64,000 nt of DNA, from positions 62,001 through 126,000 of IMG/VR virus record IMGVR_UViG_3300028920_000001; one strand, given 5' to 3'. The position numbers and the translations under genes were made by a program. Position 1 is the first letter of the stretch; the number at the start of each line of letters is the position of its first letter. Positions 33,864 to 61,354 of the stretch are shown here, piece after piece. The notes beneath the pieces were generated by a model, which did not search any database, was not told the origin of the DNA, and saw only the letters and a list, made by a program, of their open reading frames with translations.

Positions 33864-33917
33864 ACGGTAACCTTTAATCGCCGGCCCAAATTGGGCAAAA
33901 ATTTGACCAAAGGTCGT
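33864..33917 (-). ncRNA. circularly permuted Y-RNA-like module
   Basis: ACCUUUGGUC-AAAUUUUU-GCCC-AAUUU-GGGC-CGGC-GAUUAAAGGU-UACCG. Confidence 0.65.
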
Positions 33918-33975
33918 TATATGGTTATTATCCCATATAAAATTACATCTATAAATAGGTGAAGATCTCATCTAT

Positions 33976-34105
33976 TAGTGAAAGGGGCAGGATTCGAACC
34001 CGCGACACTATGCTTTGCAACGATAACCCTAATCCTACGACCCGGGACGGGTAAAAAGGCGGAAAAGGTCTCTAACACATGCTCTACCAACTGAGCTACC
34101 CTTTC
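33976..34105 (-). ncRNA. tRNA-scaffold / Y-module chimera 1 (130 nt)
   Basis: acceptor GAAAGGG/CCCUUUC, canonical D and T arms, anticodon loop replaced by about 61 nt containing UUUUUACCC-GUCCC-GGGUCGUAGGAUUAGGGUUAUCG. Confidence 0.8.
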
Positions 34106-34108
34106 AAA

Positions 34109-34178
34109 ACGGGTAAAGAATTGATACCGGACTGTTGTCTTCAGAAAAGAGGGCGATAACCCGATATCTCCGACCCGT
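34109..34178 (-). ncRNA. Y-RNA-like RNA (70 nt)
   Basis: 5' ACGGGUCGGAGAUAUCGGGUUAUCG ... AAUUCUUUACCCGU 3'; promoter motif TGTAAAGT 5 nt upstream. Confidence 0.75.
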
Positions 34179-34199
34179 ATCAAACTTTACACCTGAAAA

Positions 34200-34610
34200 T
34201 TAACTTTCAAGTATATCTTCAATTATTATCATATTAACCATCTCGATCATAGTTTCATATGATAATAATTTAACCGCTGATTTTAGCATCCCACGAAATT
34301 GAAGTAAACAAATATTAGCCCTATAAGTATTTTGAGCAAATTCGTTCAATTCAATAAATTTTTGAAATCCATCTAGTTTCAAAAGTGAGTCAGAATCAAC
34401 TGGTTCAAATATATCTTCTCCTAATTCTTGAGCAAAATCGCATATAATATGAAATGCTAGTTCTCTCTTATTCATAAATCGAAAGAAACTGATTTGAGTT
34501 CGAGAACAAACTGGTGGTAATTTATAAATTACTTCATATGATTTAAGATCAGTAGAAATGTTTTCTATTTGAGCAAGCCCTAAACAATTAGCAAGTTGCT
34601 CAAGATTCAT
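34200..34610 (-). CDS. hypothetical protein with variant tag (ILES)
   Basis: ends IIEDILES*. Confidence 0.65.
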   Translation of the reverse strand: MNLEQLANCLGLAQIENISTDLKSYEVIYKLPPVCSRTQISFFRFMNKRELAFHIICDFAQELGEDIFEPVDSDSLLKLDGFQKFIELNEFAQNTYRANICLLQFRGMLKSAVKLLSYETMIEMVNMIIIEDILES

Positions 34611-34927
34611 GAATTCATTACCTGAAAAACTGGATTACGTTGTTGACAGATATGACAAATAGCTTTATCATTATCACTCAAATCTTTAGACCATTTAATA
34701 CGTGAAGAATACCACCAATTAGTAGGCATCCAGCGAAGCCGAAGCTTTTTACATTGAGGGCAACGACGATAACGCTTTGAATTATATTTTCTTTTACCCT
34801 TAAATTTGAAATGACTCTCTCGAGCTCGATTTAACATGACGAAGTAGGAGGGAGAGCCCTGCCCAGACTCTCCCTCCTCTCCTAGTTTAGAATTCACCCT
34901 TCGAGAAGGATATCGAAACGTTGGCAT
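34607..34927 (-). CDS. basic zinc-binding hypothetical protein with VMNS tag
   Basis: CPQC..CHIC; ends PVFQVMNS*. Confidence 0.65.
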   Translation of the reverse strand: MPTFRYPSRRVNSKLGEEGESGQGSPSYFVMLNRARESHFKFKGKRKYNSKRYRRCPQCKKLRLRWMPTNWWYSSRIKWSKDLSDNDKAICHICQQRNPVFQVMNS

Positions 34928-35050
34928 CGCTCACGAATAACCTTCTCAATCAGTGTTGCAGATGACTCAGCGATTTCCTGCTCTAGTTTGCTTCGCTTCT
35001 GCAATGCGGCCTCCCCTGTTCGTTCGTGTTTGACATATATATCTCCGGGC

Positions 35051-35869
35051 CTACTGGTAGATATTAACTACTGCATTATTACCGTACACTTCTTTAGCTC
35101 GTTGATCATAAGCCATGGCAGCTAATTCTTCTGTTTCAAAACTACCTATAACACGGGTCTTTCCATCGTAAAACAAACGAGCCCTCCAACTTTTACCTCC
35201 TTTTGGTTTATATACTCCCTTATACTTAGAAGTCTTCTTTTTATTCAGGGCTACTCGATCAAAGATGTCTTTCTTTCGTTCCATCCAAACTGAAGCATCT
35301 TTGTACATCCATTCTTTAATACGTAGTATTTCATATTTGCTGCTCCATTGAATCTTGTGGCATTTCTGAAATATAATTTTAGTATTCCTAATACTAAGCC
35401 TGTTTACCAAGATTGATTTAATGAATTGAACGAATTCGTATGTTCCAACAAAATAAACACAAAATAATCCATTCTTCTTTTGACTTATTCCTCCATCTCC
35501 GTCAAAATATCCTCGTATGAAATGATGGACTAATTCTAAAGGAATATAGTCGAATACTTTAGAATTTAATACTTTAGTCTTCTGCTTTGGTACGTCTTTG
35601 TCTAAAATAGAATTACATAAATATTTAGAAGATAACAAACATCGAACATGCTCATAGTTTTTACGAGTTCTTTTATCGTAAGAAGTTTTAATTCGCACAG
35701 AAACATTAAATATGGAAGCCAATTTATCTAAATGCAATTTATCTTTAGATGATAAATAAAAACAAACCTGTTTTCCATTTGGATAAATGCATCCATCGGC
35801 ACAGAAGAATCCAAACCAGTAGGCTTGCTCTTCTGTGCCGATGGTGTCGAAGAATTCTTGTCTCTTCAT
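35051..35869 (-). mobile_element. LAGLIDADG homing endonuclease with C-terminal AP2 domain
   Basis: YWFGFFCADGCI, HFIRGYFDGDGGI; AP2 KYKGVY...WRARL...IGSFETEELAAMAYD. Confidence 0.88.
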
Positions 35870-35891
35870 GCCCTTTACAGGGCATTAAAGA

Positions 35892-37637
35892 TTAAAATTC
35901 TCCTTTGGAGAAAGAAGAAATAAGATCGGGGACTGAAGTATCCATGCCACAAATGTCCAACATTCCAGGATCACGCGGGTCAGCGATGGTAAATTTATCG
36001 CTGGTTAGACCGCAAACAATCAGCCGAGCTTGACGGCCCATTTCCTGCCGATACTTACGCAGGGCCTGAAAGGGCTGCATGCGGCCGGCCCACGTTTCAT
36101 TGTCCGTGTAGACCATGAACGTATCAACTTCGATCTTGTGCTTTAGAGCATACAGCATTGGCTGTGAGCAATCAGTTCCACCGAAGTCTTGACGGGCAGT
36201 GACTTCACAAACCTGATCCAGCCGCATTTTCGGGCTGATATTCAGAACAGTTACGCCACTATCAGGATCGCTGGAAGAATTATTACGACTACCCCAACCC
36301 CAACCGCCACCGGATTCACAAGTGAATCCGATTACCTGCCAATTCTGCTCGAGCTTAGCAGTAACCATGGCCATAGCAGCTGCGGCTTCACGACAAGTCA
36401 AAGTACCACATCCTTGGATGGCAGAGCCCATAGACCCAGAAACATCCAAAGCAAGCAAGTAGTTTTTACCTGTCGGCTGAACTGACTTGAATGCCGTATA
36501 AAATGCAGAATCCATGGCATCAATTACTTGAGTTACTGGGCTCCAGCTGAGTTTACCCTTATCACCATGACCAGATTGATACTGCTTCATAGCAATCAGG
36601 ATCTTCATCGGGTGAAGACGACTCTTACGGATGGCTTCCTCGTTGGCGAACTGTTCAGCTACTTTCTTGGAAGCGGCACTCATCGGCTTGATTAGTCCAC
36701 AAGCCGTCATAACTCCCAAATTACGCGTTAGCGCTGTCATCGGAAGACCACGGTCGAGCAGAGCCTCCCAAATCTCAGGCTCTTTCTTCCACTGAGTCGG
36801 AAGCATCTCATGGCTGAGCCAATATTCATGAATCAACTTGATTACTTCCGCCTTTGATTCGGCCAGCTGGACGGCTTCGAAACCATGGACCAGCTTCGGC
36901 AGAGCTTCCCGATTGAGCTCCTCATAGGAGTCCATACGAGAGTCCTTCTTCTGGCCCTTTCTGAGCACTTCTCGGGCCTCGAGGCTACCATCTTGGGTAA
37001 CCCACCGAAATAGCGCTTGATAAGCTCCGGAATCCATTTCCGGGTCACGACGGACCAATTCAAATGGGTTGGCGTGGCTCAGCTTCAGAAGATCCTTGTG
37101 GGACCATCCATTTCGTTGCTGATACTTGACCAATTGAAGAGCCAACTTATCGGCCGGCTTATCGAGATACCAATTAGCTACAGCATTCCGAAGAGCCCGT
37201 CCCCAACGCCGGAAATTCTCAACATCAGCCGCAAAGTTGAATAGATCAGTACCAATACGGCAAACCTTCGGTAAAGCTTGAAGGGCCGCCTTTCGCACTT
37301 CATTATCCGAATGACCGGCTGCCATGGCGAGACAGAATACTGCCGGATCATTTTTGACCGCACGACCTGCCTGGCTGATTTCAGCGATACGCTTGACTGT
37401 CCGGATACCGTCTTGTTTCAGACACTCCCCAATTGCCTTAGCATTTTCCTTGACGAGCTTTTTCTCGCCAACGTAATAAGTCGAACCCTCAGCACCAAGA
37501 ATCAAAAACCGGTCTAAGCTAGTCCAGCAATCGACCTGCCAAACATAACCGCCTGCACGGTTCTTGACCTGATCCTCACGAGCTTGCTCACTCTGAGAAG
37601 TTACTCGTGGATTGACAATTTCTCCATACCTGGTCAT
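35892..37637 (-). CDS. rsr: Ro60 / TROVE-domain RNA-binding protein with vWA domain (Rsr-like)
   Basis: start MTRYG at 37637 after AGGAG; NRAGGY, LDRFLILGAEG.TYY, KYQQRNGWSHKDLLKLSH, ALTRNLG.MT, RLHP, vWA LALDVSGSM, TDNETW, D..MLD.CG.D. Confidence 0.93.
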   Translation of the reverse strand: MTRYGEIVNPRVTSQSEQAREDQVKNRAGGYVWQVDCWTSLDRFLILGAEGSTYYVGEKKLVKENAKAIGECLKQDGIRTVKRIAEISQAGRAVKNDPAVFCLAMAAGHSDNEVRKAALQALPKVCRIGTDLFNFAADVENFRRWGRALRNAVANWYLDKPADKLALQLVKYQQRNGWSHKDLLKLSHANPFELVRRDPEMDSGAYQALFRWVTQDGSLEAREVLRKGQKKDSRMDSYEELNREALPKLVHGFEAVQLAESKAEVIKLIHEYWLSHEMLPTQWKKEPEIWEALLDRGLPMTALTRNLGVMTACGLIKPMSAASKKVAEQFANEEAIRKSRLHPMKILIAMKQYQSGHGDKGKLSWSPVTQVIDAMDSAFYTAFKSVQPTGKNYLLALDVSGSMGSAIQGCGTLTCREAAAAMAMVTAKLEQNWQVIGFTCESGGGWGWGSRNNSSSDPDSGVTVLNISPKMRLDQVCEVTARQDFGGTDCSQPMLYALKHKIEVDTFMVYTDNETWAGRMQPFQALRKYRQEMGRQARLIVCGLTSDKFTIADPRDPGMLDICGMDTSVPDLISSFSKGEF

Positions 37638-37695
37638 GGTTTTTTCTCCTTGAACGGCCCGAAATTCAGGCAAAAACCCAGATAGCGAAATCTGG
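37638..37695 (-). promoter_or_regulatory. Y-RNA-like module in the Ro60 5' UTR overlapping its Shine-Dalgarno
   Basis: GGUUUUU-GCCUG-AAUUU-CGGGC-CGUUC-AAGGAG-AAAAAACC-AUG. Confidence 0.6.
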
Positions 37696-50019: not shown

Positions 50020-50027
50020 GGTAGACT

Positions 50028-50503: not shown

Positions 50504-50633
50504 TAGTGCCCCGAACAGGATTTGAACCTGTAACATCCGGCTTGAATGGCGATAACCCTTATCCTCCGGCCCGAATCGGGCAAAAAATCGGCAAGGATAT
50601 TTTACGGCGCTCTATCCGTTGAGCTATCGGGGC
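50504..50633 (-). ncRNA. tRNA-scaffold / Y-module chimera 2 (130 nt)
   Basis: acceptor GCCCCGA/UCGGGGC, D and T arms canonical; insert AUCCUUGCCGAUUUUUUGCCCG-AUU-CGGGCCGGAGGAUAAGGGUUAUCGCC. Confidence 0.8.
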
Positions 50634-50748: not shown

Positions 50749-50750
50749 AA

Positions 50751-50880
50751 ACGGGCAAAAAATCGTGAATGGATGTTGAAGGTTGGATTCGAACCAACGA
50801 CCTCCGGATGTTAGTCCGGCGCTCTAACCACTGAGCTACTCGCTCGATTGATGGGCGATAACCCACACACTCCGGCCCGT
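50751..50880 (-). ncRNA. Y-RNA-like RNA carrying an internal degenerate tRNA cloverleaf (130 nt)
   Basis: 5' ACGGGCCGGAGUGUGUGGGUUAUCGCC ... D-arm, CCGGA-CUAACA-UCCGG (6-nt loop), T-arm ... AUCCAUUCACGAUUUUUUGCCCGU 3'; 2-nt spacers to flanking tRNAs. Confidence 0.75.
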
Positions 50881-50882
50881 AT

Positions 50883-50959: not shown

Positions 50960-50971
50960 GTTAAAGTTTCT

Positions 50972-51049: not shown

Positions 51050-51070
51050 GATCTGTTGTATTATTTAATA

Positions 51071-51433: not shown

Positions 51434-51443
51434 ATCTTAAATC

Positions 51444-52369: not shown

Positions 52370-52387
52370 TAATAACTCTAGAGCAAT

Positions 52388-52463
52388 TGGTACGGGGCGT
52401 GAGGATCGAACTCACCTTGTTCTCCTTGTAAAAGAGATGCCATCACCAGACGACTCGCCCCGC
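52388..52463 (-). tRNA. tRNA-Val(UAC)
   Basis: loop UU-UAC-AA, CCA encoded. Confidence 0.88.
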
Positions 52464-52693
52464 TCTCTACTTGGTTGAATTACGCCCCCTAAGATTCCTG
52501 GTTAGTTTCTCTTAAATCTTTAAGTTTTGCTTTAATCTCGGTAATCCAACCACAACATTTTATACATACATGATCTTTATGTACAATTCCTTCCCTGTTC
52601 GGTGGTCCGAAAAATAATCCACCTGGTTCCATCAACTCCTTTCCACAGAAATCACAGACCACTTGAATCATAATCAATTGTACAATTATCTTA

Positions 52694-53041
52694 ATGTTGG
52701 AAGAAATCAAAGCTCAGATGGCAACTGTTTCTTCTCGAGAGAAAAGATTAGATATTATTTATGATGTGATCGATGACGCATTGATAGCAGGTAAGTTTAA
52801 TGAAATTAACCAAATGTTTACAGAAATCAAATGTGAGGAATTTGAAGCAACTGAATTGTTAGGATTTCTAACCATCACTTTAATGGCTCATGGCCAATTA
52901 TCCAATCGTGGATGGTTCTATGATCAATGCAAAATTGAATTATTAAAAAGTCGTCCATTAACAGAAGTTAATAAAATGACAAGTGGCTTGGCATTTCCTT
53001 ATCAAGCCCAAACTCAAGCCAAGAAAATTGTTACTAAATAG
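52694..53041 (+). CDS. hypothetical protein with KKIVTK C-terminal tag
   Basis: ends TQAKKIVTK*. Confidence 0.7.
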   Translation: MLEEIKAQMATVSSREKRLDIIYDVIDDALIAGKFNEINQMFTEIKCEEFEATELLGFLTITLMAHGQLSNRGWFYDQCKIELLKSRPLTEVNKMTSGLAFPYQAQTQAKKIVTK

Positions 53042-53113
53042 TCGGAGTGAGAGGAATTGAACCTCCATGATCTCGGTCCCGAACCGAGTGGCTTACCAGT
53101 TGCCTACACTCCG
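53039..53113 (-). tRNA. tRNA-Pro(CGG)
   Basis: CUCGG-UUCGGGA-CCGAG. Confidence 0.9.
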
Positions 53114-53114
53114 G

Positions 53115-53184
53115 CTGGGGTACTAGGACTCGAACCTAGATACTGAGATCCAAAGTCTCAGGTCCTACCGTTGGACGATACCCC
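53115..53184 (-). tRNA. tRNA-Gln(UUG), second copy
   Basis: UGGGGUA/UACCCCA, UGAGA-CUUUGGA-UCUCA. Confidence 0.88.
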
Positions 53185-53187
53185 AAT

Positions 53188-53259
53188 TGGTCGCTACGGA
53201 GGGATCTCGAACCCTCGCCCAAGGCCGTATGAAAGCCCGGTCCTTCCTAGGTCGTAGCG
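53188..53259 (-). tRNA. tRNA-Met/Ile2(CAU) with reduced D-arm
   Basis: CGCUACG/CGUAGCG, loop UU-CAU-AC, CCA encoded; D-arm barely pairs. Confidence 0.7.
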
Positions 53260-53292
53260 GAAGATTCTAGTTCATTTAACGTAATCTTTAAC

Positions 53293-53712
53293 ATGCTTAT
53301 CGAATGGGATAAAATCATTGGTATAAGCTTTAGAAAAAGAGAAGATGGTTATGATTTTATAGTCACTACTGATGAAGCATATGATGCTGCGGACGGTTGG
53401 CATGCAGGTGATGAAGAGCATACAATATTTTTTAAATCCGATTGTACTTGGCAAGATATAAGAATAAGTCTAGATGCCATTAATTATCATTTTCAGAAAG
53501 AAGTTGAAAAACAAATTCGAGCAATTACACGTAAAGTCTTTGATATCATCGGTCCTAATTTCTCTAATGAAGGACATAGACAATTTCATTGTTGGTGGAA
53601 TTGCCTTCATTTTGAAGAATTCGTATTATATTTAACTAATTATGTTAATTATGAAGATGCTTTGGAAATTTTAAATCGAATTTATTTAGTTAAATCAATA
53701 ATGGATAGTTAA
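53293..53712 (+). CDS. hypothetical protein with C-terminal IMDS tag
   Basis: ends LVKSIMDS*. Confidence 0.7.
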   Translation: MLIEWDKIIGISFRKREDGYDFIVTTDEAYDAADGWHAGDEEHTIFFKSDCTWQDIRISLDAINYHFQKEVEKQIRAITRKVFDIIGPNFSNEGHRQFHCWWNCLHFEEFVLYLTNYVNYEDALEILNRIYLVKSIMDS

Positions 53713-54065
53713 GAATTCATAACCTGATAGATAGTCCAACTCGGTGAATTTTCAAAATGTGCTTCATTGATTTCATGAATCTCGAGTCCATCATTAATTG
53801 CACATCCTAATTTATCTTGTCCCTTAGGAGTAGTAATTAATTGAGTTAAGTATTTTTCATTTGATAAATTTAAAATATTACCAAAACGACGACGTTGGAC
53901 TTGAGTAAGTCGTACAAACCAGAAATCGGATTCATTAATAGTAGCCATTCCTAAAAGAAGCGAGTTGCTATCTCGATACCATCGTACATCTTTACCTGTC
54001 ATTAAATGATAATCTCTAGCTTTATTAAGAACTTCACCTAGATCACTACACTGATGTTTGTTCAT
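53709..54065 (-). CDS. hypothetical protein with C-terminal VMNS tag
   Basis: ends TIYQVMNS*. Confidence 0.7.
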   Translation of the reverse strand: MNKHQCSDLGEVLNKARDYHLMTGKDVRWYRDSNSLLLGMATINESDFWFVRLTQVQRRRFGNILNLSNEKYLTQLITTPKGQDKLGCAINDGLEIHEINEAHFENSPSWTIYQVMNS

Positions 54066-54080
54066 ATTTCATTTTACAAT

Positions 54081-54159
54081 TGGTTGCGGGCACGGGGAGT
54101 CGAACCCCGCTGTTACTAGCTCATGAGGCTAGTGTGTAATGCCGTTTCACTCGCCCGCA
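54081..54159 (-). tRNA. tRNA-Met/Ile2(CAU)
   Basis: CUAGC-CUCAUGA-GCUAG, CCA encoded. Confidence 0.88.
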
Positions 54160-54234
54160 TAGTCTCCCCAGCAGGACTCGAACCTGCATAACAAGCTCCG
54201 GAGGCTTGTGCCTTATCCATTAGACGATGAGGAG
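54160..54234 (-). tRNA. tRNA-Arg(CCG)
   Basis: loop CU-CCG-GA. Confidence 0.88.
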
Positions 54235-54251
54235 AATTTACTACCCTAAAA

Positions 54252-54857
54252 CTAGCATTTATTTCTAATAAAACATAAAGGAAAAACAATATCACTCATA
54301 CAACATGGGATCAGTACTGCTAAAAACAAAAACACACTAATTAAAACTAATTCTACAGCATCAAATCTAGTCTGAGTAGCCATGGAAATATGAAATAATG
54401 ATGCCCAAGTACTAAGCAATACATGAATTGTATGAGGAAATTTGGTACTAGGTATAAGAATCCCTAATAGGATTCCAACTAAAGCTAATGGATTAATTAA
54501 CCACCATTTTTCGATGAATCCAATATGATGATGAGCATGAGGCATATTAAGCAATAGCTCTCCTACATACGGAATGATACAATCACTTAATGTGCCAATT
54601 CCAATAGAACCCATATATCCAATTAATATGATATATCCAAATCTAAATTTACTACCAGAATTTAGACAAAAAATTCCAGTAGTAACCCATGCACTAACTA
54701 AAACATGAAGAGGATGTAAAGTCCAAAACGCATTTTCGGAAAATGATCTTGGTAAGTCTAAAACTAAAATCAATGCCATAATGGCAATTCCAGTAAAGAC
54801 TCCAAAACTAGTAAATGGGGAATGAATTTTAAGTTCTTTTATGATAGTAACTAACAT
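54252..54857 (-). CDS. multi-pass membrane protein with conserved-looking His motifs (possible metal-binding/transport)
   Basis: HSPFT, LHPLHVLVSA, TLSDCIIPY, HAHHHIGFIE, HTIHVLLSTWASLFH, PCCMSDIVFP. Confidence 0.65.
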   Translation of the reverse strand: MLVTIIKELKIHSPFTSFGVFTGIAIMALILVLDLPRSFSENAFWTLHPLHVLVSAWVTTGIFCLNSGSKFRFGYIILIGYMGSIGIGTLSDCIIPYVGELLLNMPHAHHHIGFIEKWWLINPLALVGILLGILIPSTKFPHTIHVLLSTWASLFHISMATQTRFDAVELVLISVFLFLAVLIPCCMSDIVFPLCFIRNKC

Positions 54858-54890
54858 ACTAATAAATACAAAAGTAGACTTTAAACTTAC

Positions 54891-54966
54891 GGAGCCCCTA
54901 GCAGGAGTCGAACCCGCATTAACCTGGTTCCGTAGACCAGTGCATTCTCCGTTATGCTATAGGGGC
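54891..54966 (-). tRNA. tRNA-Arg(ACG)
   Basis: CUGGU-CUACGGA-ACCAG. Confidence 0.88.
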
Positions 54967-54993
54967 AAAAATACTGATGTGCTGTTCTAATCC

Positions 54994-55065
54994 GGAGCCC
55001 CCACTAGGAGTCGAACCTAGAACGCGAAGCTTAGAACACTCTGCTGGGTATCCGTCCCTGAGGGC
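54994..55065 (-). tRNA. tRNA-Arg(UCU)
   Basis: loop GU-UCU-AA; weak anticodon stem. Confidence 0.75.
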
Positions 55066-55117
55066 CTATCGTGTGATTATTCGTCTTTTCCACTCTCTGC
55101 ATGCTTTACAATTAGGA

Positions 55118-55963
55118 TCATAACCTTGATGTCTTGAACAAATTCCTGCCATCTCGTTTCTTTCTGCCTGTTAGTTCATATAATGAAGTGCCATTTCTCA
55201 TTAGCCAACAATCAATTGAAATCCAAGTTCTTCCGTCAGTTGACTGACAACTTTTCTTATCCCGATTAACAATAGGGAGTCTTCCAGTTTGAACAAAGAA
55301 ATCTTTGATCCATGATTTAATTAACGGGATTGTAAATGATGGATATGAACGAGTCTTTAGACCAAGCTTCTCTTTCATATAGATTCCTGTACTCATTTTA
55401 TGATTTTTACGAATCCATTCACCAATAGTTCTCCAGTCCCATCCATTAGTAAATTCGTTGCCTTTATGCGGAACTTTTTGGTATTTTGCATAATAGAGTT
55501 TAATCCAACTATCAACAGATGCTTTGGTTAGTGGAACATGTGGTCCTTTAAAACCAATAAACTCTGGTGTTACCCTCTTAGTTTCTATCCTCTGTTTAAT
55601 TGGCTTTCTTCTATCAAATTTTTTATCTAGAGCTCGAGCTTTCTTTAAAGTTATGAGTCTCAAGTTATCTCTGCAGAAATTTAACTTATTCCCATCTAGA
55701 TGATAAATAACGTATCCTCTTTTCCCTTTCTTTCCTTTAATGAAATACTTCAGATTATGACATGGTTCTCCAATACTATGTAGAGAATGGACCTGTTTGC
55801 CTTTTTTCCATACCCACTTATATTCATTAACTCGATCCCAGTCCTTTTCATCAATTAATGCAAAATTTCCATTTCCCACTTCTATCCATTGTTTACCAGG
55901 CTTTTTTCGTGGTTTCGGATGTCCGTAGGTAGATGACGGTTTTGGCACATTATTATTGTACAT
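55118..55963 (-). mobile_element. HNH-related homing endonuclease homolog with repeated C-terminal DNA-binding-like units
   Basis: FALIDEKDWDRVNEYKW...YHLDGNKLNFCRDNL; repeated 'I.SWIK.(Y/F)...G..P...W..I..W.R'. Confidence 0.65.
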
Positions 55964-55970
55964 TAAAATA

Positions 55971-56192
55971 ATGGCTTATCCTATAGGAACTCATGTTAAA
56001 ATTAAAGAACATCATCATAGTATTGATAATGATGCCTGGTATGGAACTATTGAAAATTATGATCATGATACCACACTTTATGAAGTGAAAATTGATCAAG
56101 ATGAAATTAAATGGAATAGACTTGTATTTGAAAATGAATTCGTTATTGTTTCTCCAGATGAGCTTTTATTATTAGAAGTTATGAAATCTTAG
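55971..56192 (+). CDS. small SH3/KOW-like protein with C-terminal VMKS tag
   Basis: MAYPIGTHVKI...GTI...YEV; ends LLLEVMKS*. Confidence 0.65.
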   Translation: MAYPIGTHVKIKEHHHSIDNDAWYGTIENYDHDTTLYEVKIDQDEIKWNRLVFENEFVIVSPDELLLLEVMKS

Positions 56193-56262
56193 AGTCCTAG
56201 GTGAGATTCGAACTCACTTCCTGTGGGTTGCAATCACAGTCCCGCATCCCGCGAACTAGGAC
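56190..56262 (-). tRNA. tRNA-Cys(GCA)
   Basis: loop UU-GCA-AC, U73. Confidence 0.85.
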
Positions 56263-56340
56263 AATAAGGATAGGTCTGCAGCCTCATCCTTAATCAGTTA
56301 TTCGGAGGAGTGGCGTCCCACTCATATTAAAGTGAATAAC

Positions 56341-56416
56341 TGGAGCGGCCGACGAGGATCGAACTCGTACTTCTAGCTTGGCAAGCTAGCTTGCTACCAT
56401 TAAACAACACGGCCGC
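56341..56416 (-). tRNA. tRNA-Gly(GCC)
   Basis: CUAGC-UUGCCAA-GCUAG, UCCA end. Confidence 0.9.
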
Positions 56417-56418
56417 AA

Positions 56419-56668
56419 ACGACTCGTTCCAATTGGTTTAGCCAACCGGGCCCTGGAACAAGTCGAATCGAAGAATTTTAAACAATCCGATAAGCACAAG
56501 CTCGGATCACAAGGACTGTTATAGACTGTGCCTTTCCATAACACCTCATCAAAATTCTTCAGAGCGACAGGAGGGTAACGCTCCCTCACATCTTAATAGA
56601 CTCGTCACTTTCCGAATCAGTCGCTAGACAACTACCGGTTTCCCGATTCAGAGTCGGGTCCGGCTCGT
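56419..56668 (-). ncRNA. unassigned approximately 250-nt structured RNA between two tRNA-Gly genes
   Basis: stems CCCGA/UCGGG, GCGAC/GUCGC, GAGGG/CCCUC, GAAGAAUUUU/AAAAUUCUUC, AUCCGA/UCGGAU, GUUCCA/UGGAAC. Confidence 0.55.
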
Positions 56669-56744
56669 TAGAGCAGGATACGAGATTCGAACTCGTGATT
56701 TTCTGGTTGGAAGCCAGACGCCTTACCAACTTGGCTAATCCTGC
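56669..56744 (-). tRNA. tRNA-Gly(UCC)
   Basis: UCUGG-CUUCCAA-CCAGA. Confidence 0.9.
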
Positions 56745-56801
56745 AAATGACCCGAAGGTCAAGTCAACTCAGATTTCCCATCCTAAGGGCGGGCCTGATG
56801 T

Positions 56802-56875
56802 TGGAGCCAGCCTAGAGAATCGAACTCTAATCGCACCCGTACCAGGGGTGTGCTCTACCATTGAGCTAGGCTGGC
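56802..56875 (-). tRNA. tRNA-Thr(GGU)
   Basis: CACCC-CUGGUAC-GGGUG, CCA encoded. Confidence 0.9.
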
Positions 56876-56877
56876 AA

Positions 56878-56942
56878 ACGGGCAAAAAATTGACGGAAGG
56901 CAGTTTCGTTTACAAGGCGATAACCTTCAATCTCCGGCCCGT
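56878..56942 (-). ncRNA. Y-RNA-like RNA (65 nt)
   Basis: ACGGGCCGGAGAUUGAAGGUUAUCGCC...CCUUCCGUCAAUUUUUUGCCCGU; 2 nt upstream of tRNA-Thr. Confidence 0.75.
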
Positions 56943-56965
56943 AAATCTTTTTGTAGAGTCAAAAC

Positions 56966-57373
56966 ATGGTTGACGATGAACTTGATCAATTATGGGAACA
57001 AATTCCTTGGTCTCCAGGATCATCGCATATTTGTGATGATTCTAAAGAATGCAATGATTTAATAGAGGAACAACTTAAATTCTTAGAGGAGGATCCATTT
57101 AAAGATCCATCAAATCCTCATAATGACATTGTTACGTCGGAAGCAAGAGTCTACAAGTCATTAGGGAGGCATAAAATTGAAAATGAACAAAATCATGAAG
57201 GTTCGTTTCGTGTATTATACCCAAAAAAACGAACTATATTAGTAGATCTATATGGCTTAGCTTATGAACAAGGTCGTTTTAGTACTCACTTAATAACATT
57301 GAGAAAGCAAGATGCAGAGCAACAGGTAGAAACTCGCAAGAAAGCTATTATACTTAGTGTGATGGAGTCATAA
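56966..57373 (+). CDS. hypothetical protein with C-terminal VMES tag
   Basis: ends IILSVMES*. Confidence 0.7.
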   Translation: MVDDELDQLWEQIPWSPGSSHICDDSKECNDLIEEQLKFLEEDPFKDPSNPHNDIVTSEARVYKSLGRHKIENEQNHEGSFRVLYPKKRTILVDLYGLAYEQGRFSTHLITLRKQDAEQQVETRKKAIILSVMES

Positions 57374-57580
57374 ATGGCCGTTTATCCTTATCATTGCACT
57401 AATAAAAAATGCGGCCATGAATGGGAAGCTGAACACGGGATGAACGAAGACCCACTTAAGAAATGCCCTAAGTGTAAAAAGAAAACAGCTAAAAGAGACA
57501 TTGCTGGATCAAATTTTGTTCTTAAAGGTCCTGGTTGGGCTGATGATGGTTACAGCCAAAAATTTAACCCTGAGACTTAG
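57374..57580 (+). CDS. FmdB-family zinc-ribbon protein
   Basis: MAVYPYHC..KCGHEWE...M.EDPL..CPKC...FVLKG.GW. Confidence 0.85.
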   Translation: MAVYPYHCTNKKCGHEWEAEHGMNEDPLKKCPKCKKKTAKRDIAGSNFVLKGPGWADDGYSQKFNPET

Positions 57581-57809
57581 TAGCTTCTAATTCTTTTTCC
57601 ATTTCTTCTAAAGCATCATAATATCGAGGATCTTCAACTAAATGGTCTCTTACAATCTCTAAGGCAATATTGGCATCATCAGTATGCTCTAATTCAACTA
57701 AAATCCCTTTACCTAAAGCACAGGGATCAAATTGATTAATATCGCATTCATCAGCTTTCCCACCCGGAAGTTGATCAGTGATCCTTAAAGCTAACTTAGA
57801 TAAATCCAT
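57564..57809 (-). CDS. DUF5661-like phage protein with type-A N-terminal leader
   Basis: LPGGKAD...FDP.AL.KGI.VELEHT.D..IA.EI..DHL.EDP.YY..L. Confidence 0.7.
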   Translation of the reverse strand: MDLSKLALRITDQLPGGKADECDINQFDPCALGKGILVELEHTDDANIALEIVRDHLVEDPRYYDALEEMEKELEATKSQG

Positions 57810-57832
57810 ATTTTAAATTCAAATTAAAACTA

Positions 57833-57906
57833 TAGTGGACCAGCAGGGAATCGAACCCTGATGCGACTGCTTGCAGAGCAGTGCCCTGAACCCATCAGAC
57901 CAGCCC
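57833..57906 (-). tRNA. tRNA-Ala(UGC)
   Basis: G3:U70, loop UC-UGC-AA. Confidence 0.85.
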
Positions 57907-57991
57907 TTGGGTGAGATGCTCGCGCGCAGCTTTTTGTAGGCCCCGACAAGATCTGTCGTTTCTCACCTTGCCTTCGGAGTCTCGAGCCTCC

Positions 57992-58064
57992 TAGTGGACC
58001 TGCAGAGAGTTGAACTCTGATGCAACTGTGTGCGACACAGTACCCCGACCCGCCGGACAAGCCC
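57992..58064 (-). tRNA. tRNA-Ala(CGC)
   Basis: G3:U70, ACUGU-GUCGCAC-ACAGU. Confidence 0.8.
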
Positions 58065-58065
58065 T

Positions 58066-58142
58066 TAGTGGAACCGGAGGGATTCAAACCCTCGACCTCT
58101 TGTCTGCCAGACAAGCGCTCTCTCGGACTGAGCTACGATCCC
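58066..58142 (-). tRNA. tRNA-Ala(GGC)
   Basis: G3:U70, CUUGU-CUGGCAG-ACAAG. Confidence 0.88.
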
Positions 58143-58143
58143 G

Positions 58144-58217
58144 TAGCGGGCTGTCATGGGATCGAACCATGAGCAGTGGACTTGGAAACCACTATGTTGC
58201 CATTACACCAACAGCCC
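58144..58217 (-). tRNA. tRNA-Trp(CCA)
   Basis: GUGGU-UUCCAAG-UCCAC, G73. Confidence 0.88.
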
Positions 58218-58936
58218 TAAGCCGCTTTCTTAAAGAATTTTCTGGAATTCTTTAATTTCTCTTTGTCTGTTTCATCCCAAATCTTTTTCTTACGCTTCAT
58301 GAAAATGGTTGCGTCTTTGTACATCCATTCACAGAGAAGCATTGAATCGTACTGATTAAATATCAACTTCTGAGCTTTTCCATTAGCAATCTTTTTGTTT
58401 CCCACAGGAATAAACTCACGGAGCTTCTGTTTAAAATCTTCTAAGAAATTTCCGGTGTCATTCCCGGCAGTGAAAGAAGTTCCTAAAGCAGAAATACGTC
58501 TCCCGTGTCGATTATTGTAATGCTTGTAATATATAGACCCATCCCCATCGAAATAGCCACGTACAAAATGATGAAAATACTTGTTAGGAATTTTGGGATA
58601 AGAGTATTTAAATGACTTCTTTCTAGTACCTCCAAAACTTATTAATTTATTGACCATATGATTACTTCCAAATCTAACAAATCCATACGACGATCCCCTA
58701 CCATAGGATTTTGGGTTAGAACTAATGATTTGAATCTTTTTCTTTAGTTTCATTAAATCAATTATCATTTCAAGATGATCAACATCTTTCCCAGAAAAAC
58801 TTATTCTAGCATGAGACCTCTTCCCATTCTTACGATGTCTGATGTATATACTTCCATCAGCCCACCAGAATCCAAACACGTAGGCTGAAGCTTCATTCCA
58901 TTGATCAAAGAATTTTTCGTTAACTCTCCAATTCAC
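58217..58936 (-). mobile_element. LAGLIDADG homing endonuclease, free-standing, abutting tRNA-Trp
   Basis: AYVFGFWWADGSI, HFVRGYFDGDGSI. Confidence 0.88.
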
Positions 58937-59172
58937 AATTTACTTTATCATCGTTATTCTAATAGTAATTTTCAAAGAAATCGCCCTCAGCCTCAGACCC
59001 ATGCAAGTCAATAATTGACTTGTGTATTCTTATTTATGAACTCTCGGTTATTCCGATATTTACTAAAGTATCGTTGGTTCCGGTTTTTGGTAGATTACGG
59101 ATTTAATGTAAAAATTGGCTGCCCTAATTGTGGAAAAGGGAGTCTTGAATCAAATCCTGGTCGTACTCACCA

Positions 59173-59448
59173 TTGTGGAGCTTGTGGATATCTAAGGTAA
59201 TTTATTTTATGTGGGTGATCCAATGTGTTAGATCCAAAATGTTTGCTTCTAAACTCAGTGGAGTTTTACCTACCTTAAGTCAAATTGATGATGCTTTATT
59301 TTTTGAAACTCGAATTGCAGCTGATGTTAAATTAACTGGTTATTTCAATGATTGGCTAACTCGCTATCCAAGTCATAATTTGAAGGATTTTACCTATACA
59401 GTAGTGCGTGCAGAAGATTTTATAGTGAGCAATGTTATGGAGTCATGA
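59173..59448 (+). CDS. hypothetical protein with C-terminal VMES tag
   Basis: ends IVSNVMES*; start probably MWVIQ. Confidence 0.65.
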   Translation: MWSLWISKVIYFMWVIQCVRSKMFASKLSGVLPTLSQIDDALFFETRIAADVKLTGYFNDWLTRYPSHNLKDFTYTVVRAEDFIVSNVMES

Positions 59449-59459
59449 CTCCATAACAT
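59432..59459. repeat. perfect 28-bp palindrome at the junction of two convergent VMES-tagged genes
   Basis: ATGTTATGGAGTCA|TGACTCCATAACAT. Confidence 0.95.
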
Positions 59460-59718
59460 CTGAAATAATTTCATTTTCCAATTGATCTATTTGCTCAATT
59501 AGCGCTTTACCTTTACGTTCTATTCTTTTATCAATCGGGCTAAAAAGCATTGCTAAAAAGGCCAGATGTACCCAAACGTCTGCAGGTTTATCCATAAATA
59601 AATAGTCATACATTCCAAGAGTTGCCATGGTGAGAAAAGTAGCACAACACCCGAAATTTAAGAAACGAATAGCAACTAAAATCCAAAATAATATATTAGC
59701 TCGGCGCAAAGACTTCAT
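59443..59718 (-). CDS. 2-TM protein with C-terminal VMES tag
   Basis: ends IISDVMES*. Confidence 0.7.
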   Translation of the reverse strand: MKSLRRANILFWILVAIRFLNFGCCATFLTMATLGMYDYLFMDKPADVWVHLAFLAMLFSPIDKRIERKGKALIEQIDQLENEIISDVMES

Positions 59719-59930
59719 GATCTCATGACTTTGCCGGTAATAATTTCAAACGCTTTCTCACCAACTTCCTCCAAACACTGGGGACAAAATCTTACTTCAA
59801 TAGTGCTTAAACCGTGTCGCATTCGTTCAGCACTTTTAACAACAAATATGTAGGTGGACGATTCATCCAGACAAAAATTACAAAATCCAGCGTCCCTCTG
59901 ACTTACTTTTACAATAGATATATTTTTCAT
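59715..59930 (-). CDS. zinc-binding small protein with VMRS tag
   Basis: CNFC..CPQC; ends ITGKVMRS*. Confidence 0.7.
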   Translation of the reverse strand: MKNISIVKVSQRDAGFCNFCLDESSTYIFVVKSAERMRHGLSTIEVRFCPQCLEEVGEKAFEIITGKVMRS

Positions 59931-60310
59931 GATTCCATGATTTCCTTAACTGTCAAGAAATACCGCGATTCCCTACGGATTTTCATTATCAATCTCAGAA
60001 ATTCCCACAATTCAACTTCTTTCACAAAATTAACTTGTGAATGAGTCGTATAAATGTTCATAGTAGTAATATCAACTGGAAGAAGTGGTCTCTTCACAAT
60101 CACTACAGCTAAAGTTCCATCAGCTAGTTTATGAACCAAAATTGGCCCGACTCTTTTTCTAAAAGCGTAATTATGTAAATAAACTAAGCCACTACTATCA
60201 ATTAATATATCTGCATAATGACAAAAACAACATTCTCCATTTTGGAGAGTGCTAACTTGCTTATCATATTCAAATAAGATACTAGTAGTGTAACCCTCAG
60301 GTTGGCCCAT
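59927..60310 (-). CDS. hypothetical protein with C-terminal IMES tag
   Basis: ends TVKEIMES*. Confidence 0.7.
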   Translation of the reverse strand: MGQPEGYTTSILFEYDKQVSTLQNGECCFCHYADILIDSSGLVYLHNYAFRKRVGPILVHKLADGTLAVVIVKRPLLPVDITTMNIYTTHSQVNFVKEVELWEFLRLIMKIRRESRYFLTVKEIMES

Positions 60311-60353
60311 AAATGTATTTTACAATGTGCCTAGTTGATAAAATTATGTTTAT

Positions 60354-60929
60354 TTAGGATTCATCACTATGTTCTCCAGTTAGTTTATCAACCCCAAGTT
60401 CCACACCAGTTCTTTGTTCCCAATTTGAGTACCATTCACATCTTCGAGATGAAGTAGGAACTGCAGACATCAGTCTACTAATTTCTCCGTCCCGATCTTC
60501 AAAAAATCCCCATCCCAACCAACTCAGCCAATGACAGAATGGATGAGCTGCATCCCAGTGCACTTTATTAACAATAAGTGCGTATCCTTCTTTGTCTTTC
60601 CAAATTCCAAACCATGGATTCCAATCCTTACCTCCATAATAAAGAACAAGATCCCGAAGAATCATGAGTTCAAATTTTGCATTTTTGAGTTTAGGAACAA
60701 TAGCAAGTTTCAAGACTCCAGAACCACGTTTAAATTCTGGTAGAACTGGCTTTACAGGTTCCGGTACCTGAACAATTCTAGTCGGAATAGGAATTAATTC
60801 AAAAGGAACTGGTTGAATATCAGCTGTAGGAGCAGGTGTTGTAATAGGCTCGAGTAATTTCATAGGCTCCTGTGGAAGTGCATCATTACACCCTAAACTA
60901 ATTAATACTAAACTGATGAAATATCTCAA
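60354..60929 (-). CDS. exported/lipoprotein-like hypothetical protein
   Basis: MRYFISLVLISLGC signal, Pro-rich linker. Confidence 0.6.
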   Translation of the reverse strand: MRYFISLVLISLGCNDALPQEPMKLLEPITTPAPTADIQPVPFELIPIPTRIVQVPEPVKPVLPEFKRGSGVLKLAIVPKLKNAKFELMILRDLVLYYGGKDWNPWFGIWKDKEGYALIVNKVHWDAAHPFCHWLSWLGWGFFEDRDGEISRLMSAVPTSSRRCEWYSNWEQRTGVELGVDKLTGEHSDES

Positions 60930-61135
60930 CGAATTACCTTTAGGTTACCATGCTTAACTTGAATTTCTGGGTCACAGATGCTTAAGGCACAAGCAGGCAT
61001 GGCAACCATGAATTCTAAATCACCATGCTTAACCCTTACCCCATTCACCGCTCTAGTGAGTTTTATTCCATATTTATCATCTTTGTTCCAAATAAAGAAA
61101 GTCTGTCCTTGTCTGTCAAGTTGTTTGATCTTCAT
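60926..61135 (-). CDS. hypothetical protein
   Basis: TGTAAATT 5 nt upstream of ATG. Confidence 0.55.
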   Translation of the reverse strand: MKIKQLDRQGQTFFIWNKDDKYGIKLTRAVNGVRVKHGDLEFMVAMPACALSICDPEIQVKHGNLKVIR

Positions 61136-61166
61136 AAGTCAATTTACATTTGCGCCCTAATTTGCA

Positions 61167-61238
61167 GTAGGAGAGCGGGTATCGAACCCGCAATGTTTGA
61201 TTCGAGGTCAGATGTTTATCCATTAAACGATAACCTAC
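61167..61238 (-). tRNA. tRNA-Arg(UCG)-like, imperfect acceptor; 5' strand overlaps the Y motif GGUUAUCG
   Basis: D-arm GUUU/AAAC, loop CC-UCG-AA, T-arm GCGGG/CCCGC; preceded by GGGCCGGACGCGUG (61251-61238). Confidence 0.65.
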
Positions 61239-61254
61239 ACGCGTCCGGCCCATA

Positions 61255-61354
61255 TAGTCCGGGAGATAAGATTTGAACTTACGATAACCATCCTTCAACG
61301 GCCCGTACACGGGCAAAGAACGATGGACGGATGGCCGCCATGGCCAACTCCCGG
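61255..61354 (-). ncRNA. tRNA-scaffold / Y-module chimera 3 (100 nt, no anticodon stem)
   Basis: acceptor CCGGGAG/CUCCCGG, D-arm GGCC/GGCC, T-arm GUAAG-UUCAAAU-CUUAU; insert UUCUUUGCCCGU-GU-ACGGGCCGUUGAAGGAUGGUUAUC. Confidence 0.75.

What the first reader, a model, noticed from the sequence alone, without database searches (positions are those of the whole stretch)
33864..61354. Ro60 gene plus a dispersed family of nine Y-RNA-like elements
Seen on the minus strand: eight elements share GGGYCG-N9-GGUUA(U/C)CG (one has N10), at 33864, 33976, 34109, 50504, 50751, 56878, 61167 (leader to 61251) and 61255. A ninth partial copy lies in the Ro60 5' UTR. All but the 61167 copy have a partner strand U5-6-RCCC, and the N9 segment covaries with its partner (for example GAUUAAAGGU/ACCUUUGGUC, UAAGGGU/AUCCUUG, GUGUGUGGGU/AUCCAUUCAC). 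Established: Ro60/Rsr binds the terminal stem of Y RNAs, and bacterial Y RNAs are usually encoded next to rsr. From memory, vertebrate Y1/Y4 begin GGCUGGUCCG-N9-(A/G)GUUAUC, the same spacing and the same UUAUC motif as here and as in nematode sbRNAs. Inference: a phage Ro60 system with an expanded Y-RNA repertoire that looks more like metazoan Y RNA than like bacterial YrlA.
Basis: partly seen in the sequence, partly recalled or inferred. Interest (0 to 1): 0.9.

Follow-up and report, generated by a model that had tools for sequence, protein, structure and literature searches.

The report
Phage Ro60 with tRNA-shaped Y RNAs
A giant-phage contig encodes a Ro60 RNA-binding protein plus nine copies of its predicted RNA docking helix scattered through the phage's tRNA genes, three of them built into tRNA-shaped RNAs in an arrangement I did not find described.

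Summary
GGGYCG-N9-GGTTAYCG occurs 7 times, all on the minus strand, with 0 expected. An eighth copy has N10, and a ninth partial copy overlaps the Ro60 ribosome-binding site. The variable segment pairs specifically with its own partner strand (best of 5040 permutations). The gene at 35892-37637 is a full-length Ro60, closer to vertebrate Ro60 than to Deinococcus Rsr. The window matches a 427-kb IMG/VR viral contig.

- Three copies are plain hairpins ending RCCCG-UUU directly before the next tRNA.
- One replaces the acceptor stem of a tRNA-like RNA, as in Deinococcus Yrn1.
- Three are capped hairpins inserted into the anticodon stem of complete tRNA-shaped RNAs with open 7-bp acceptor stems. 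These are circular permutations of the known YrlA.

Two covariance models recover both classes next to Ro60 in many viral contigs and bacterial MAGs, with strong covariation.

The docking helix does resemble the metazoan and nematode type, but the tRNA-like modules are a bacterial Y-RNA trait. Verdict: a real Ro60/Y-RNA system, a known kind, with a new topological variant and unusual dispersal. Ro60 binding and function are inferred, not shown.

The parts
35892..37637 (-). Ro60 (TROVE + vWA) gene, 581 aa
   Evidence: Pfam vWA_Ro60 2e-62 and TROVE 1.5e-42. PHROG 850 RNA-binding protein. PDB: RO60 9nen 416 bits, X. laevis 1yvp 411 bits, D. radiodurans Rsr 2nvo 336 bits.
37638..37679 (-). Partial capped copy of the helix in the Ro60 5'UTR. 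U5-GCC, a loop, then CGGGCCG. The Shine-Dalgarno AAGGAG sits where N9 normally lies. No GGUUAUC.
   Evidence: Sequence; fold; one of the 5 capped cores against 0.07 expected. Not conserved upstream of Ro60 in relatives.
34107..34178 (-). Open hairpin Y RNA. The 5' strand GGGUCG...GGUUAUCG pairs with a 3' strand ...UUUACCCG, followed by UUUU and then +1 of the next RNA.
   Evidence: R2 model 45.4 bits. RF01656 24.9 bits, E=0.012.
33979..34105 (-). tRNA-shaped chimera 1: 7-bp acceptor stem, D arm, 54-nt capped Ro-type helix inserted on the 5' side of the anticodon loop, 7-nt loop UUGCAAA, T arm, A73-CUA trailer.
   Evidence: Rfam tRNA 48.1 bits with a 61-nt insert. R1 model 111 bits. Parse; trailer.
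33865..33917 (-). Stand-alone capped helix (GACCUUUGGUC...U5GCCC-AAUUU-GGGCCG...GGUUACCG), followed by two further hairpins.
   Evidence: Weak R1 match over 33818-33949, 30.7 bits.
50507..50633 (-). tRNA-shaped chimera 2. The capped helix is inserted into a split anticodon stem (CCG|GC / GCCGG). Loop CAUUCAA. A73-CUA trailer.
   Evidence: Rfam tRNA 49 bits with a 65-nt insert. R1 117.8 bits..
50751..50880 (-). Yrn1-like Y RNA. The open Ro-type stem takes the place of the acceptor stem of a tRNA-like core (D arm, anticodon arm with a 6-nt loop, T arm; core 50777-50845). It ends GCCCG-UUU before tRNA-Val +1 at 50748.
   Evidence: Rfam tRNA 49.9 bits with unpaired acceptor positions and a one-base loop deletion. 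R2 38.2 bits.
56878..56942 (-). Open hairpin Y RNA. It ends GCCCG-UUU before tRNA-Thr +1 at 56875.
   Evidence: Fold z = -2.55. R2 51.5 bits. RF01656 19.1 bits.
61255..61354 (-). tRNA-shaped chimera 3, reduced form: acceptor stem, small D arm, capped helix, T arm. No anticodon hairpin. A73-CUA trailer.
   Evidence: Fold z = -3.92. R1 52.1 bits. Trailer.
61167..61251 (-). Orphan 5' strand (GGGCCG-N10-GGUUAUCG) with no partner. Its 3' part forms the acceptor and D region of a degenerate tRNA-like fold.
   Evidence: Rfam tRNA 35.9 bits with two mismatched acceptor pairs. Fold no better than shuffles, z = 0.06.

Best explanation
This is a phage Ro60/Y-RNA ribonucleoprotein system.

The repeated unit is a Ro60 docking helix: a 5-6 bp stem (N)CGGGY/RCCCG(N'), an invariant unpaired C, a G.U/A-U run, a copy-specific upper helix and the junction motif GGUUAYC. 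The phage uses this helix as a portable module in three topologies:
(a) plain hairpins;
(b) a Yrn1-like RNA in which the helix replaces the acceptor stem of a tRNA-like core;
(c) complete tRNA-shaped RNAs in which the helix, closed by a small loop, is inserted in the 5' strand of the anticodon stem. Type (c) is the circular permutation of known YrlA.

Inferred steps:
- The elements are transcribed with the surrounding tRNA arrays.
- They are matured by the tRNA machinery. RNase P cutting at the next tRNA would leave the hairpins with a ...CCCG-UUU end. The chimeras would be processed at their own acceptor ends.
- Ro60 binds the helix, and the variable or tRNA-like module tethers Ro60 to a partner (PNPase or a tRNA-binding factor). 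This would specialise RNA surveillance or decay in the infected cell.
- The 5'UTR copy may let Ro60 repress its own translation.
For: Shown:
- Motif enrichment and strand bias.
- Cognate-specific pairing.
- Intact Ro60 gene.
- The same RNAs sit on the Ro60 strand beside Ro60 in 14 of 30 viral Ro60 loci.
- 15 pattern-found loci contain Ro60, and these include most of the multi-copy ones.
- Open-hairpin model R2: 66 hits. 91.9% of cells are paired, and 203 cells changed on both sides against 65.6 in shuffles (0/500). Slid controls give 55 or fewer. In the seed alignment the unpaired C and the following G are invariant, and the two flanking base pairs covary.
- Chimera model R1: 18 strong hits (74-118 bits) in 10 viral contigs. 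Acceptor, D and T arms are 100% paired with many compensatory changes. The upper Y helix is 96.7% paired. 0/500 shuffles reach the observed values.
- R1 also gives strong hits beside Ro60 in Planctomycetota, Polyangiaceae and Gemmataceae MAGs.
- All three open copies end RCCCG-UUU(U) exactly at +1 of the next tRNA or tRNA-like RNA.
- All three chimeras carry the A73-CUA trailer found in 11 of 24 window tRNAs.
- The two halves of the chimeras align colinearly, in swapped order, with mycobacteriophage YrlA. The HyRo element matches the T-acceptor-D core of Rfam YrlA (34.3 bits, E = 8.6e-6).

Established knowledge:
- Ro60 binds the bulged helix of Y RNAs, and Y RNAs tether PNPase (PMC4201824).
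- M. smegmatis YrlA is cut by RNase P and receives CCA (PMC4201824).
- Thermus phage phiLo Ro60 binds adjacent Yrl RNAs and host PNPase in vitro (PMC12135203).
Against: - There are no expression or binding data. Ro60 binding, processing and partners are all inferred.
- No window element reaches the gathering score of Rfam Y_RNA, YrlA or the nematode family.
- The window copies read GYCG(G/U)NG rather than the published GNCGAA motif.
- Five copies lie 13-25 kb from Ro60.
- The 5'UTR element is not conserved in relatives.
- Whether Ro60 tolerates a loop-closed end of the helix is untested.
- No PNPase or other obvious partner gene was found among the ORFs scanned.
Confidence: 0.78

Rival explanations
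1. The chimeras are intron-containing tRNA genes. The Y-like hairpin is excised and the exons ligated, giving functional tRNAs. The hairpin is then either an intron or a released Y RNA.
For: In 15 of 18 chimeras, removing the 48-74 nt insert restores a 5-bp anticodon stem with a 7-nt loop. By my reading of the alignment, the loops carry U at position 2 and a purine at position 6. ARAGORN in intron mode calls them tRNAs. They share the tRNA-type 3' trailers.
Against: - Chimera 3 and some relatives have no anticodon hairpin at all.
- Copies with Ser-type triplets (GCU, UGA) lack the long variable arm of tRNA-Ser.
- Chimera 2 has A rather than U at position 33.
- No splicing endonuclease or ligase was found in the ORFs scanned.
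- The permuted YrlA form, with the same modules, is a stable unspliced RNA in bacteria (PMC4201824).
Confidence: 0.07
2. The elements are a selfish mobile hairpin (MITE-like), or merely tRNA-operon processing or termination signals, unrelated to Ro60. The chimeras are then tRNA pseudogenes disrupted by insertion.
For: The family is multi-copy and dispersed among tRNA genes in a region rich in homing endonucleases. One copy (61251) looks decayed.
Against: - All 10 viral contigs with strong chimera hits carry Ro60 next to them.
- Compensatory changes maintain every helix of the chimeras across contigs, which is not expected of pseudogenes.
- The U-run lies inside the stem rather than after it, so these are not intrinsic terminators.
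- There are no terminal inverted repeats or target-site duplications.
Confidence: 0.05
3. The RNAs are the same, but their main role is counter-defence. The tRNA-shaped chimeras, which display anticodon-like loops, would act as decoys or sensors for host anticodon nucleases or other tRNA-targeting defences, with Ro60 protecting or recycling them.
For: The anticodon-loop signature is retained with varied triplets. The elements are embedded in a phage module that supplies tRNAs, tmRNA and EF-Tu. Jumbo phages pair Ro/TROVE proteins with RNA-repair genes (PMC7824862).
Against: This is purely inferential. The same chimeras occur beside Ro60 in bacterial MAG contigs, where a counter-defence role is not obvious, although some of those contigs could be prophage.
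Confidence: 0.1

Closest known systems
YrlA (bacterial and mycobacteriophage tRNA-like Y RNA; Rfam RF02553; Chen et al. 2014, PMC4201824; structure preprint 10.1101/312249)
   Same: Same modules: a Ro-binding 5' strand ending in GGUUAYC, a small hairpin with a 7-nt loop, a variable region, a T arm, an acceptor-like stem, a D arm, an A-rich linker and the 3' strand. Encoded beside Ro60. The two halves align at 68-69% column identity with HyRo and Sparky YrlA.
   Different: The order is circularly permuted. Here the RNA ends are at a 7-bp acceptor stem and the Ro-binding helix is closed by a loop. In YrlA the ends are in the Ro-binding stem and the acceptor stem is a closed loop with no free CCA end. 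The Rfam YrlA model scores the window at only 14-18 bits against a threshold of 69.
Deinococcus radiodurans Yrn1
   Same: Both strands of the Ro-binding helix are retained. In 50751-50880 the Y stem replaces the acceptor stem of a D-anticodon-T tRNA-like core, and the anticodon-like loop has 6 nt, as described for Yrn1 (PMC4201824).
   Different: No detectable sequence relationship was tested. PNPase tethering is unknown here. The element is embedded in a phage tRNA array.
Metazoan Y RNAs and nematode stem-bulge RNAs (Rfam RF00019, RF01656)
   Same: The helix architecture is GGNC-C-G(R) over (U)U-GNCC with an unpaired C. The spacing to a (G/A)GUUAUC motif at the stem-loop junction is the same, N9. 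RF01656 is the best non-tRNA Rfam match. The Ro60 protein is closest to vertebrate Ro60 among solved structures.
   Different: The window copies score below the gathering threshold. There is no Pol III or La context. Most copies carry tRNA-like modules or lie inside tRNA operons. The 3' strand here is a U-run rather than ACUUGAC.
Thermus phage phiLo Ro60 with Yrl1/Yrl2 (PMC12135203)
   Same: A phage-encoded Ro60 with adjacent Y-like RNAs. It offers a plausible model for hijacking host PNPase.
   Different: phiLo has two simple CGAA-motif hairpins upstream of the gene. Here there are nine modules in three topologies, spread over 27 kb of tRNA arrays.

Membership tests
Y RNA (Ro60 ligand, metazoan/sbRNA type) | Stem containing the conserved bulged helix (GGUC-C-GA over UU-GACC type) that Ro60 recognises | tested here: met
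   (N)CGGGY-C-G over U-run-RCCCG in 7 copies. The unpaired C and the following G are invariant in the 26 seed sequences, and the flanking pairs covary.
Y RNA (Ro60 ligand, metazoan/sbRNA type) | UUAUC motif at the upper-stem/loop junction at fixed spacing from the bulged helix | tested here: met
   GGUUAYC lies 9 nt (once 10) after GGGYCG. Human Y1 reads GGUCCG-N9-AGUUAUC in a published primer.
Y RNA (Ro60 ligand, metazoan/sbRNA type) | Reaches the Rfam gathering score of RF00019 or RF01656 | tested here: not met
   No RF00019 hit. RF01656 gives 24.9, 18.9 and 19.1 bits against a threshold of 38. One relative, L055, reaches 38.5.
Y RNA (Ro60 ligand, metazoan/sbRNA type) | Physically bound by Ro60 | not testable with these tools
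   Needs EMSA or RIP.
YrlA (RF02553) | tRNA-like domain with conserved D and T arms, encoded near Ro60 | tested here: met
   Rfam tRNA hits of 48-49 bits within the chimeras. D and T arms are 100% paired across 18 homologues. All 10 viral contigs carry Ro60 adjacent.
YrlA (RF02553) | Circularly permuted order (5' strand, T arm, closed acceptor stem-loop, D arm, 3' strand) with no free acceptor end | tested here: not met
   The order here is acceptor 5', D arm, 3' strand, cap, 5' strand, small hairpin, T arm, acceptor 3'.
YrlA (RF02553) | GNCGAAN0-1G motif | tested here: inconclusive
   Window copies read GCCGGAG, GUCGGAG, GUCGUAG, GCCGGCG, GCCGUUG and GCCGGAC. Many relatives read GCCGAAG.
YrlA (RF02553) | Reaches the Rfam gathering score | tested here: not met
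   18.1 and 14.3 bits against a threshold of 69.
Yrn1 type | Y stem in place of the acceptor stem; D arm, anticodon-like arm (6-nt loop), T arm inside; both helix strands conserved | tested here: met
   Element 50751-50880. Feature list taken from PMC4201824.
Canonical tRNA (RF00005) | Uninterrupted 5-bp anticodon stem and 7-nt loop, with identity elements matching the anticodon | tested here: not met
   There are 54-nt inserts in chimeras 1 and 2, and chimera 3 has no anticodon arm. Ser-type triplets occur without a long variable arm in relatives.

The most novel reading that the evidence does not exclude
The non-permuted chimeras (open acceptor stem, tRNA-type trailer, anticodon-like loop, Ro60 handle in the anticodon stem) form a widespread, undescribed class of Y RNA in phages and bacteria. 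They would be matured like tRNAs, possibly receive CCA or even an amino acid, and couple Ro60 directly to tRNA-handling machinery or to tRNA-targeting defence. They could also be the precursor of YrlA: a tandem duplication of one chimera yields the YrlA order, with a ready-made closed acceptor stem formed from the 3' acceptor strand of copy 1 and the 5' acceptor strand of copy 2.
Probability: 0.35. Interest if true: 0.8.

Novelty: new variant of a known kind. Interest (0 to 1): 0.62.

Why it matters
Ro60/Y-RNA particles are conserved from bacteria to humans. The partner and purpose of the tRNA-like module in bacterial Y RNAs are still unknown, and so is its origin.

A natural version with tRNA topology has a free acceptor end and usually an anticodon-like loop. 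This makes several questions directly testable:
- Is the module recognised by RNase P, the CCA-adding enzyme, synthetases or EF-Tu?
- Can Ro60 bind a loop-closed helix?
- Did YrlA arise by permutation of such a chimera?

The case also shows a giant phage wiring Ro60 ligands into its own tRNA/tmRNA/EF-Tu module. That points to RNA surveillance as part of how the phage takes over translation. Finally, it provides two covariance models that find unannotated Y RNAs beside Ro60 in many genomes.

Tried and rejected
- Rfam at gathering thresholds finds only tRNA and tmRNA in the window. There is no Y_RNA or YrlA membership.
- DNA similarity to cultured phages: none for a chimera. The Ro60 region gives only weak hits to Ro genes.
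- Conservation of the 5'UTR mini-helix upstream of Ro60 in 15 relatives: not seen. The autoregulation idea therefore stays speculative.
- Pfam and PHROG scans of the ORFs between and around Ro60 and the RNA cluster gave no RNA-repair or nuclease partner. The only hit between them is a LAGLIDADG homing endonuclease.
- Intrinsic-terminator reading: rejected, because the U-run is inside the stem.
- tRNA-intron reading: considered unlikely (see rivals).
- The tandem chimeras in L102 were checked by eye for complementarity between the acceptor strands of neighbouring units. None was found, so there is no direct support for the duplication-origin idea.
- MAFFT alone misaligned the capped end. This was solved by re-aligning to the covariance model.
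- A weak group I intron hit at 34193-34326 (14 bits) was ignored as chance.

Full report
**What is there**

The motif GGGYCG-N9-GGTTAYCG occurs seven times in the 64-kb window, always on the minus strand, with none expected from shuffles. An eighth copy with N10 lies at 61251.

The gene at 35892-37637 (-) is a full-length Ro60. It carries TROVE and Ro60-vWA domains, and its ATG at 37637 follows an AAGGAG. Among solved structures it scores 416 and 411 bits against vertebrate Ro60 (9nen, 1yvp) and 336 bits against Deinococcus Rsr.

The Ro60 is 100% identical to one on IMG/VR contig 3300028920_000001 (426,960 bp), and the motif copies recur there unchanged. The window also holds 24 tRNA genes and a tmRNA, all on the minus strand. 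Other genes include an EF-Tu, a sigma factor, several homing endonucleases and many ORFs without family matches. This fits a very large phage.

**Anatomy**

Reading and folding the copies shows one conserved helix. It has a 5-6 bp stem CGGGY/RCCCG, an unpaired C, a run of G.U/A-U pairs against a U-tract, a copy-specific upper helix, and GGUUAYCG at the junction. It is used in different topologies.

- Open hairpins: 34107-34178 and 56878-56942.
- An open stem enclosing a tRNA-like core: 50751-50880. The acceptor positions are unpaired, the anticodon-like loop has 6 nt, and the D and T arms are normal. This is the layout reported for Deinococcus Yrn1 (PMC4201824).
- Capped helices, in which the partner strand comes first and a 3-4 nt loop closes the conserved end. 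These sit inside three tRNA-shaped RNAs with perfect 7-bp acceptor stems: 33979-34105, 50507-50633 and 61255-61354. Rfam's tRNA model matches the first two at 48-49 bits with 61-65 nt inserts.
- A stand-alone capped helix at 33865-33917.
- A partial capped copy overlapping the Ro60 ribosome-binding site at 37638-37679.

The capped core TTTRCC-N3-10-GGGYCG occurs five times, against 0.07 expected.

The 61251 copy has no partner. Its GGUUAUCG forms part of a degenerate tRNA-like fold.

**Is the pairing real?**

Within the window, each variable 5' segment prefers its own partner strand. The cognate assignment is the best of all 5040 permutations.

Across genomes I built two covariance models.

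R2 models the open hairpins (seed A5).
- It finds 66 hits in the fetched viral loci and exactly the three open copies in the window.
- 91.9% of cells are paired.
- 203 cells changed on both sides, against 65.6 in shuffles (0/500). Slid controls give 55 or fewer.
- In the seed, the unpaired C and the next G are invariant, and the two base pairs below GGGY/RCCC covary.

R1 models the tRNA-shaped chimeras.
- It gives 18 hits of 74-118 bits in 10 viral contigs, clearly separated from ordinary tRNAs, which score below 60 bits.
- Acceptor, D and T stems are 100% paired with abundant compensatory changes.
- The upper Y helix is 96.7% paired.
- No shuffle reaches the observed values.

**Association with Ro60**

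- In 14 of 30 viral Ro60 loci the motif lies beside Ro60, on the same strand.
- Fifteen of the 68 loci found by the bare pattern contain Ro60, and these include most of the multi-copy ones.
- All ten viral contigs with a chimera have Ro60 adjacent.
- Both classes also occur next to Ro60 in bacterial MAG contigs from Planctomycetota, Polyangiaceae, Gemmataceae and Armatimonadota.
- Several other contigs of 277-465 kb show the hairpins scattered through tRNA arrays, as in this window.

**The chimeras are permuted YrlA**

In the model alignment, most chimeras keep a 5-bp anticodon-type stem that the 48-74 nt helix interrupts on its 5' strand. A 7-nt loop follows. Fifteen of 18 give 5 of 5 pairs, against a mean of 3.6 for shuffled tails. 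By my reading of the alignment, the loops show U at position 2 and a purine at position 6. The loop triplets vary, and Ser-type triplets occur without a long variable arm, so these are mimics rather than decoding tRNAs.

Mycobacteriophage HyRo carries the same modules in the published YrlA order: 5' strand ending GGUUACC, small hairpin, T arm, closed acceptor stem-loop, D arm, A-rich linker, 3' strand. Rfam's YrlA model matches its T-acceptor-D core (34.3 bits, E = 8.6e-6). The 3' halves of the chimeras align with the 5' part of HyRo and Sparky YrlA, and the 5' halves with the 3' part (68-69% column identity).

The literature describes YrlA as resembling a circularly permuted tRNA with a closed acceptor stem, no free CCA end and no anticodon loop (preprint 10.1101/312249). 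The form with tRNA topology was not described in any paper I could retrieve, and Rfam labels it only as tRNA.

**Processing clues**

All three open RNAs end RCCCG-UUU(U) exactly at +1 of the downstream tRNA or chimera. RNase P would therefore define their 3' ends. This is an inference.

All three chimeras are followed by A73-CUA, the trailer seen in 11 of the 24 window tRNAs. This suggests a shared 3' maturation pathway. There is a precedent: M. smegmatis YrlA is cut by RNase P and receives CCA (PMC4201824).

**Comparison with metazoan Y RNAs**

A published Y RNA1 primer reads GGCTGGTCCG-AAGGTAGTG-AGTTATC, and relatives of the phage RNAs carry ACUUGCCC as the 3' strand. The only non-tRNA Rfam family resembling the open copies is a nematode small-RNA family, RF01656, which from memory is a stem-bulge RNA family. 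The window copies fall below its threshold, and one relative just passes it.

So the docking helix is of the metazoan/Deinococcus double-stranded type. The effector modules are the tRNA-like type known from bacteria and phages.

**Mechanism (inferred)**

Ro60 binds the helix. The different distal modules then adapt it to different partners, as in the Ro60/Y RNA/PNPase machine of Deinococcus and Salmonella, and as shown in vitro for Thermus phage phiLo (PMC12135203).

The placement inside the tRNA/tmRNA/EF-Tu module suggests surveillance or turnover of structured RNAs during the phage's takeover of translation.

The 5'UTR copy places the Shine-Dalgarno sequence inside a Ro-type helix, which suggests autoregulation. 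It is not conserved in relatives, so I hold this loosely.

**Verdict**

This is a real, well-supported Ro60/Y-RNA system. Phage Ro60 with Y RNAs is already known. New here are the YrlA variant with tRNA topology, the use of one docking helix in three topologies within one genome, and its dispersal through tRNA arrays.

Noticed in passing
window 13832-14185 (-): Phage-encoded tmRNA (Rfam 106.5 bits) with tag peptide ANDNASLAIAA.
   Followed up: no
window 18541-18615 (-): A tRNA with anticodon UCA. ARAGORN calls it tRNA-SeC, and it scores 55 bits as an ordinary 74-nt tRNA. It could be an opal-reading or suppressor tRNA, which hints at stop-codon recoding in part of this genome.
   Followed up: no
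window 47783-63024 (-): Eleven of the 24 tRNA genes are followed by N73-C-U-A rather than an encoded CCA, while eight encode CCA. The three Y-RNA chimeras share the CUA trailer. This looks like a genome-specific 3' processing signature.
   Followed up: partly
window 63069-63995 (-): EF-Tu gene (domains 2 and 3 and part of the GTPase domain), with its N-terminus cut off by the end of the window. It sits next to the tRNA arrays.
   Followed up: no
window 5955-7142 (-) and 27747-28871 (-): A saccharopine-dehydrogenase-family protein and a PLP-dependent decarboxylase (Orn/DAP/Arg type). Together these resemble a carboxy(nor)spermidine polyamine pathway. An adenylosuccinate lyase lies at 20045-21466 (+).
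   Followed up: no
window 9547-10128, 26452-27525, 35051-35869, 55118-55963, 58217-58936 (all -): Five homing-endonuclease-type genes (HNH, GIY-YIG, LAGLIDADG+AP2, HNH, LAGLIDADG) are interspersed with the tRNA and Y-RNA genes. One sits between Ro60 and its RNA cluster.
   Followed up: no
window 53041-53185 (-): tRNA-Gln(UUG) and tRNA-Pro(CGG) overlap by one nucleotide (53113). ARAGORN in intron mode fuses them into a spurious intron-containing tRNA.
   Followed up: no
window 50634-50673 (-): A long, nearly perfect hairpin (GAACUUUU-CUCGAGG...CUCGAGG-CAAAAAGUUC) fills the spacer between tRNA-Val(GAC) and chimera 2. It could be a processing site.
   Followed up: no
L102:5861-6116 (Planctomycetales MAG contig CAZNDQ010000001.1): Two chimeras lie in tandem, 2 nt apart, directly downstream of Ro60. 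The open-hairpin model also weakly matches the stretch from the 5' strand of unit 1 to the 3' strand of unit 2. That stretch has the YrlA order.
   Followed up: partly
L134:1704-1769 (Microbacterium phage Cece, OP068343.1): An unannotated Y-type hairpin (R2 42 bits) lies between tRNA-Ile and tRNA-Ala, 2.2 kb upstream of Ro60 in a cultured phage. This is a practical system for experiments. The tmRNA in Gordonia phage Sixama (L131:5989-6410) is also unannotated in the record.
   Followed up: partly
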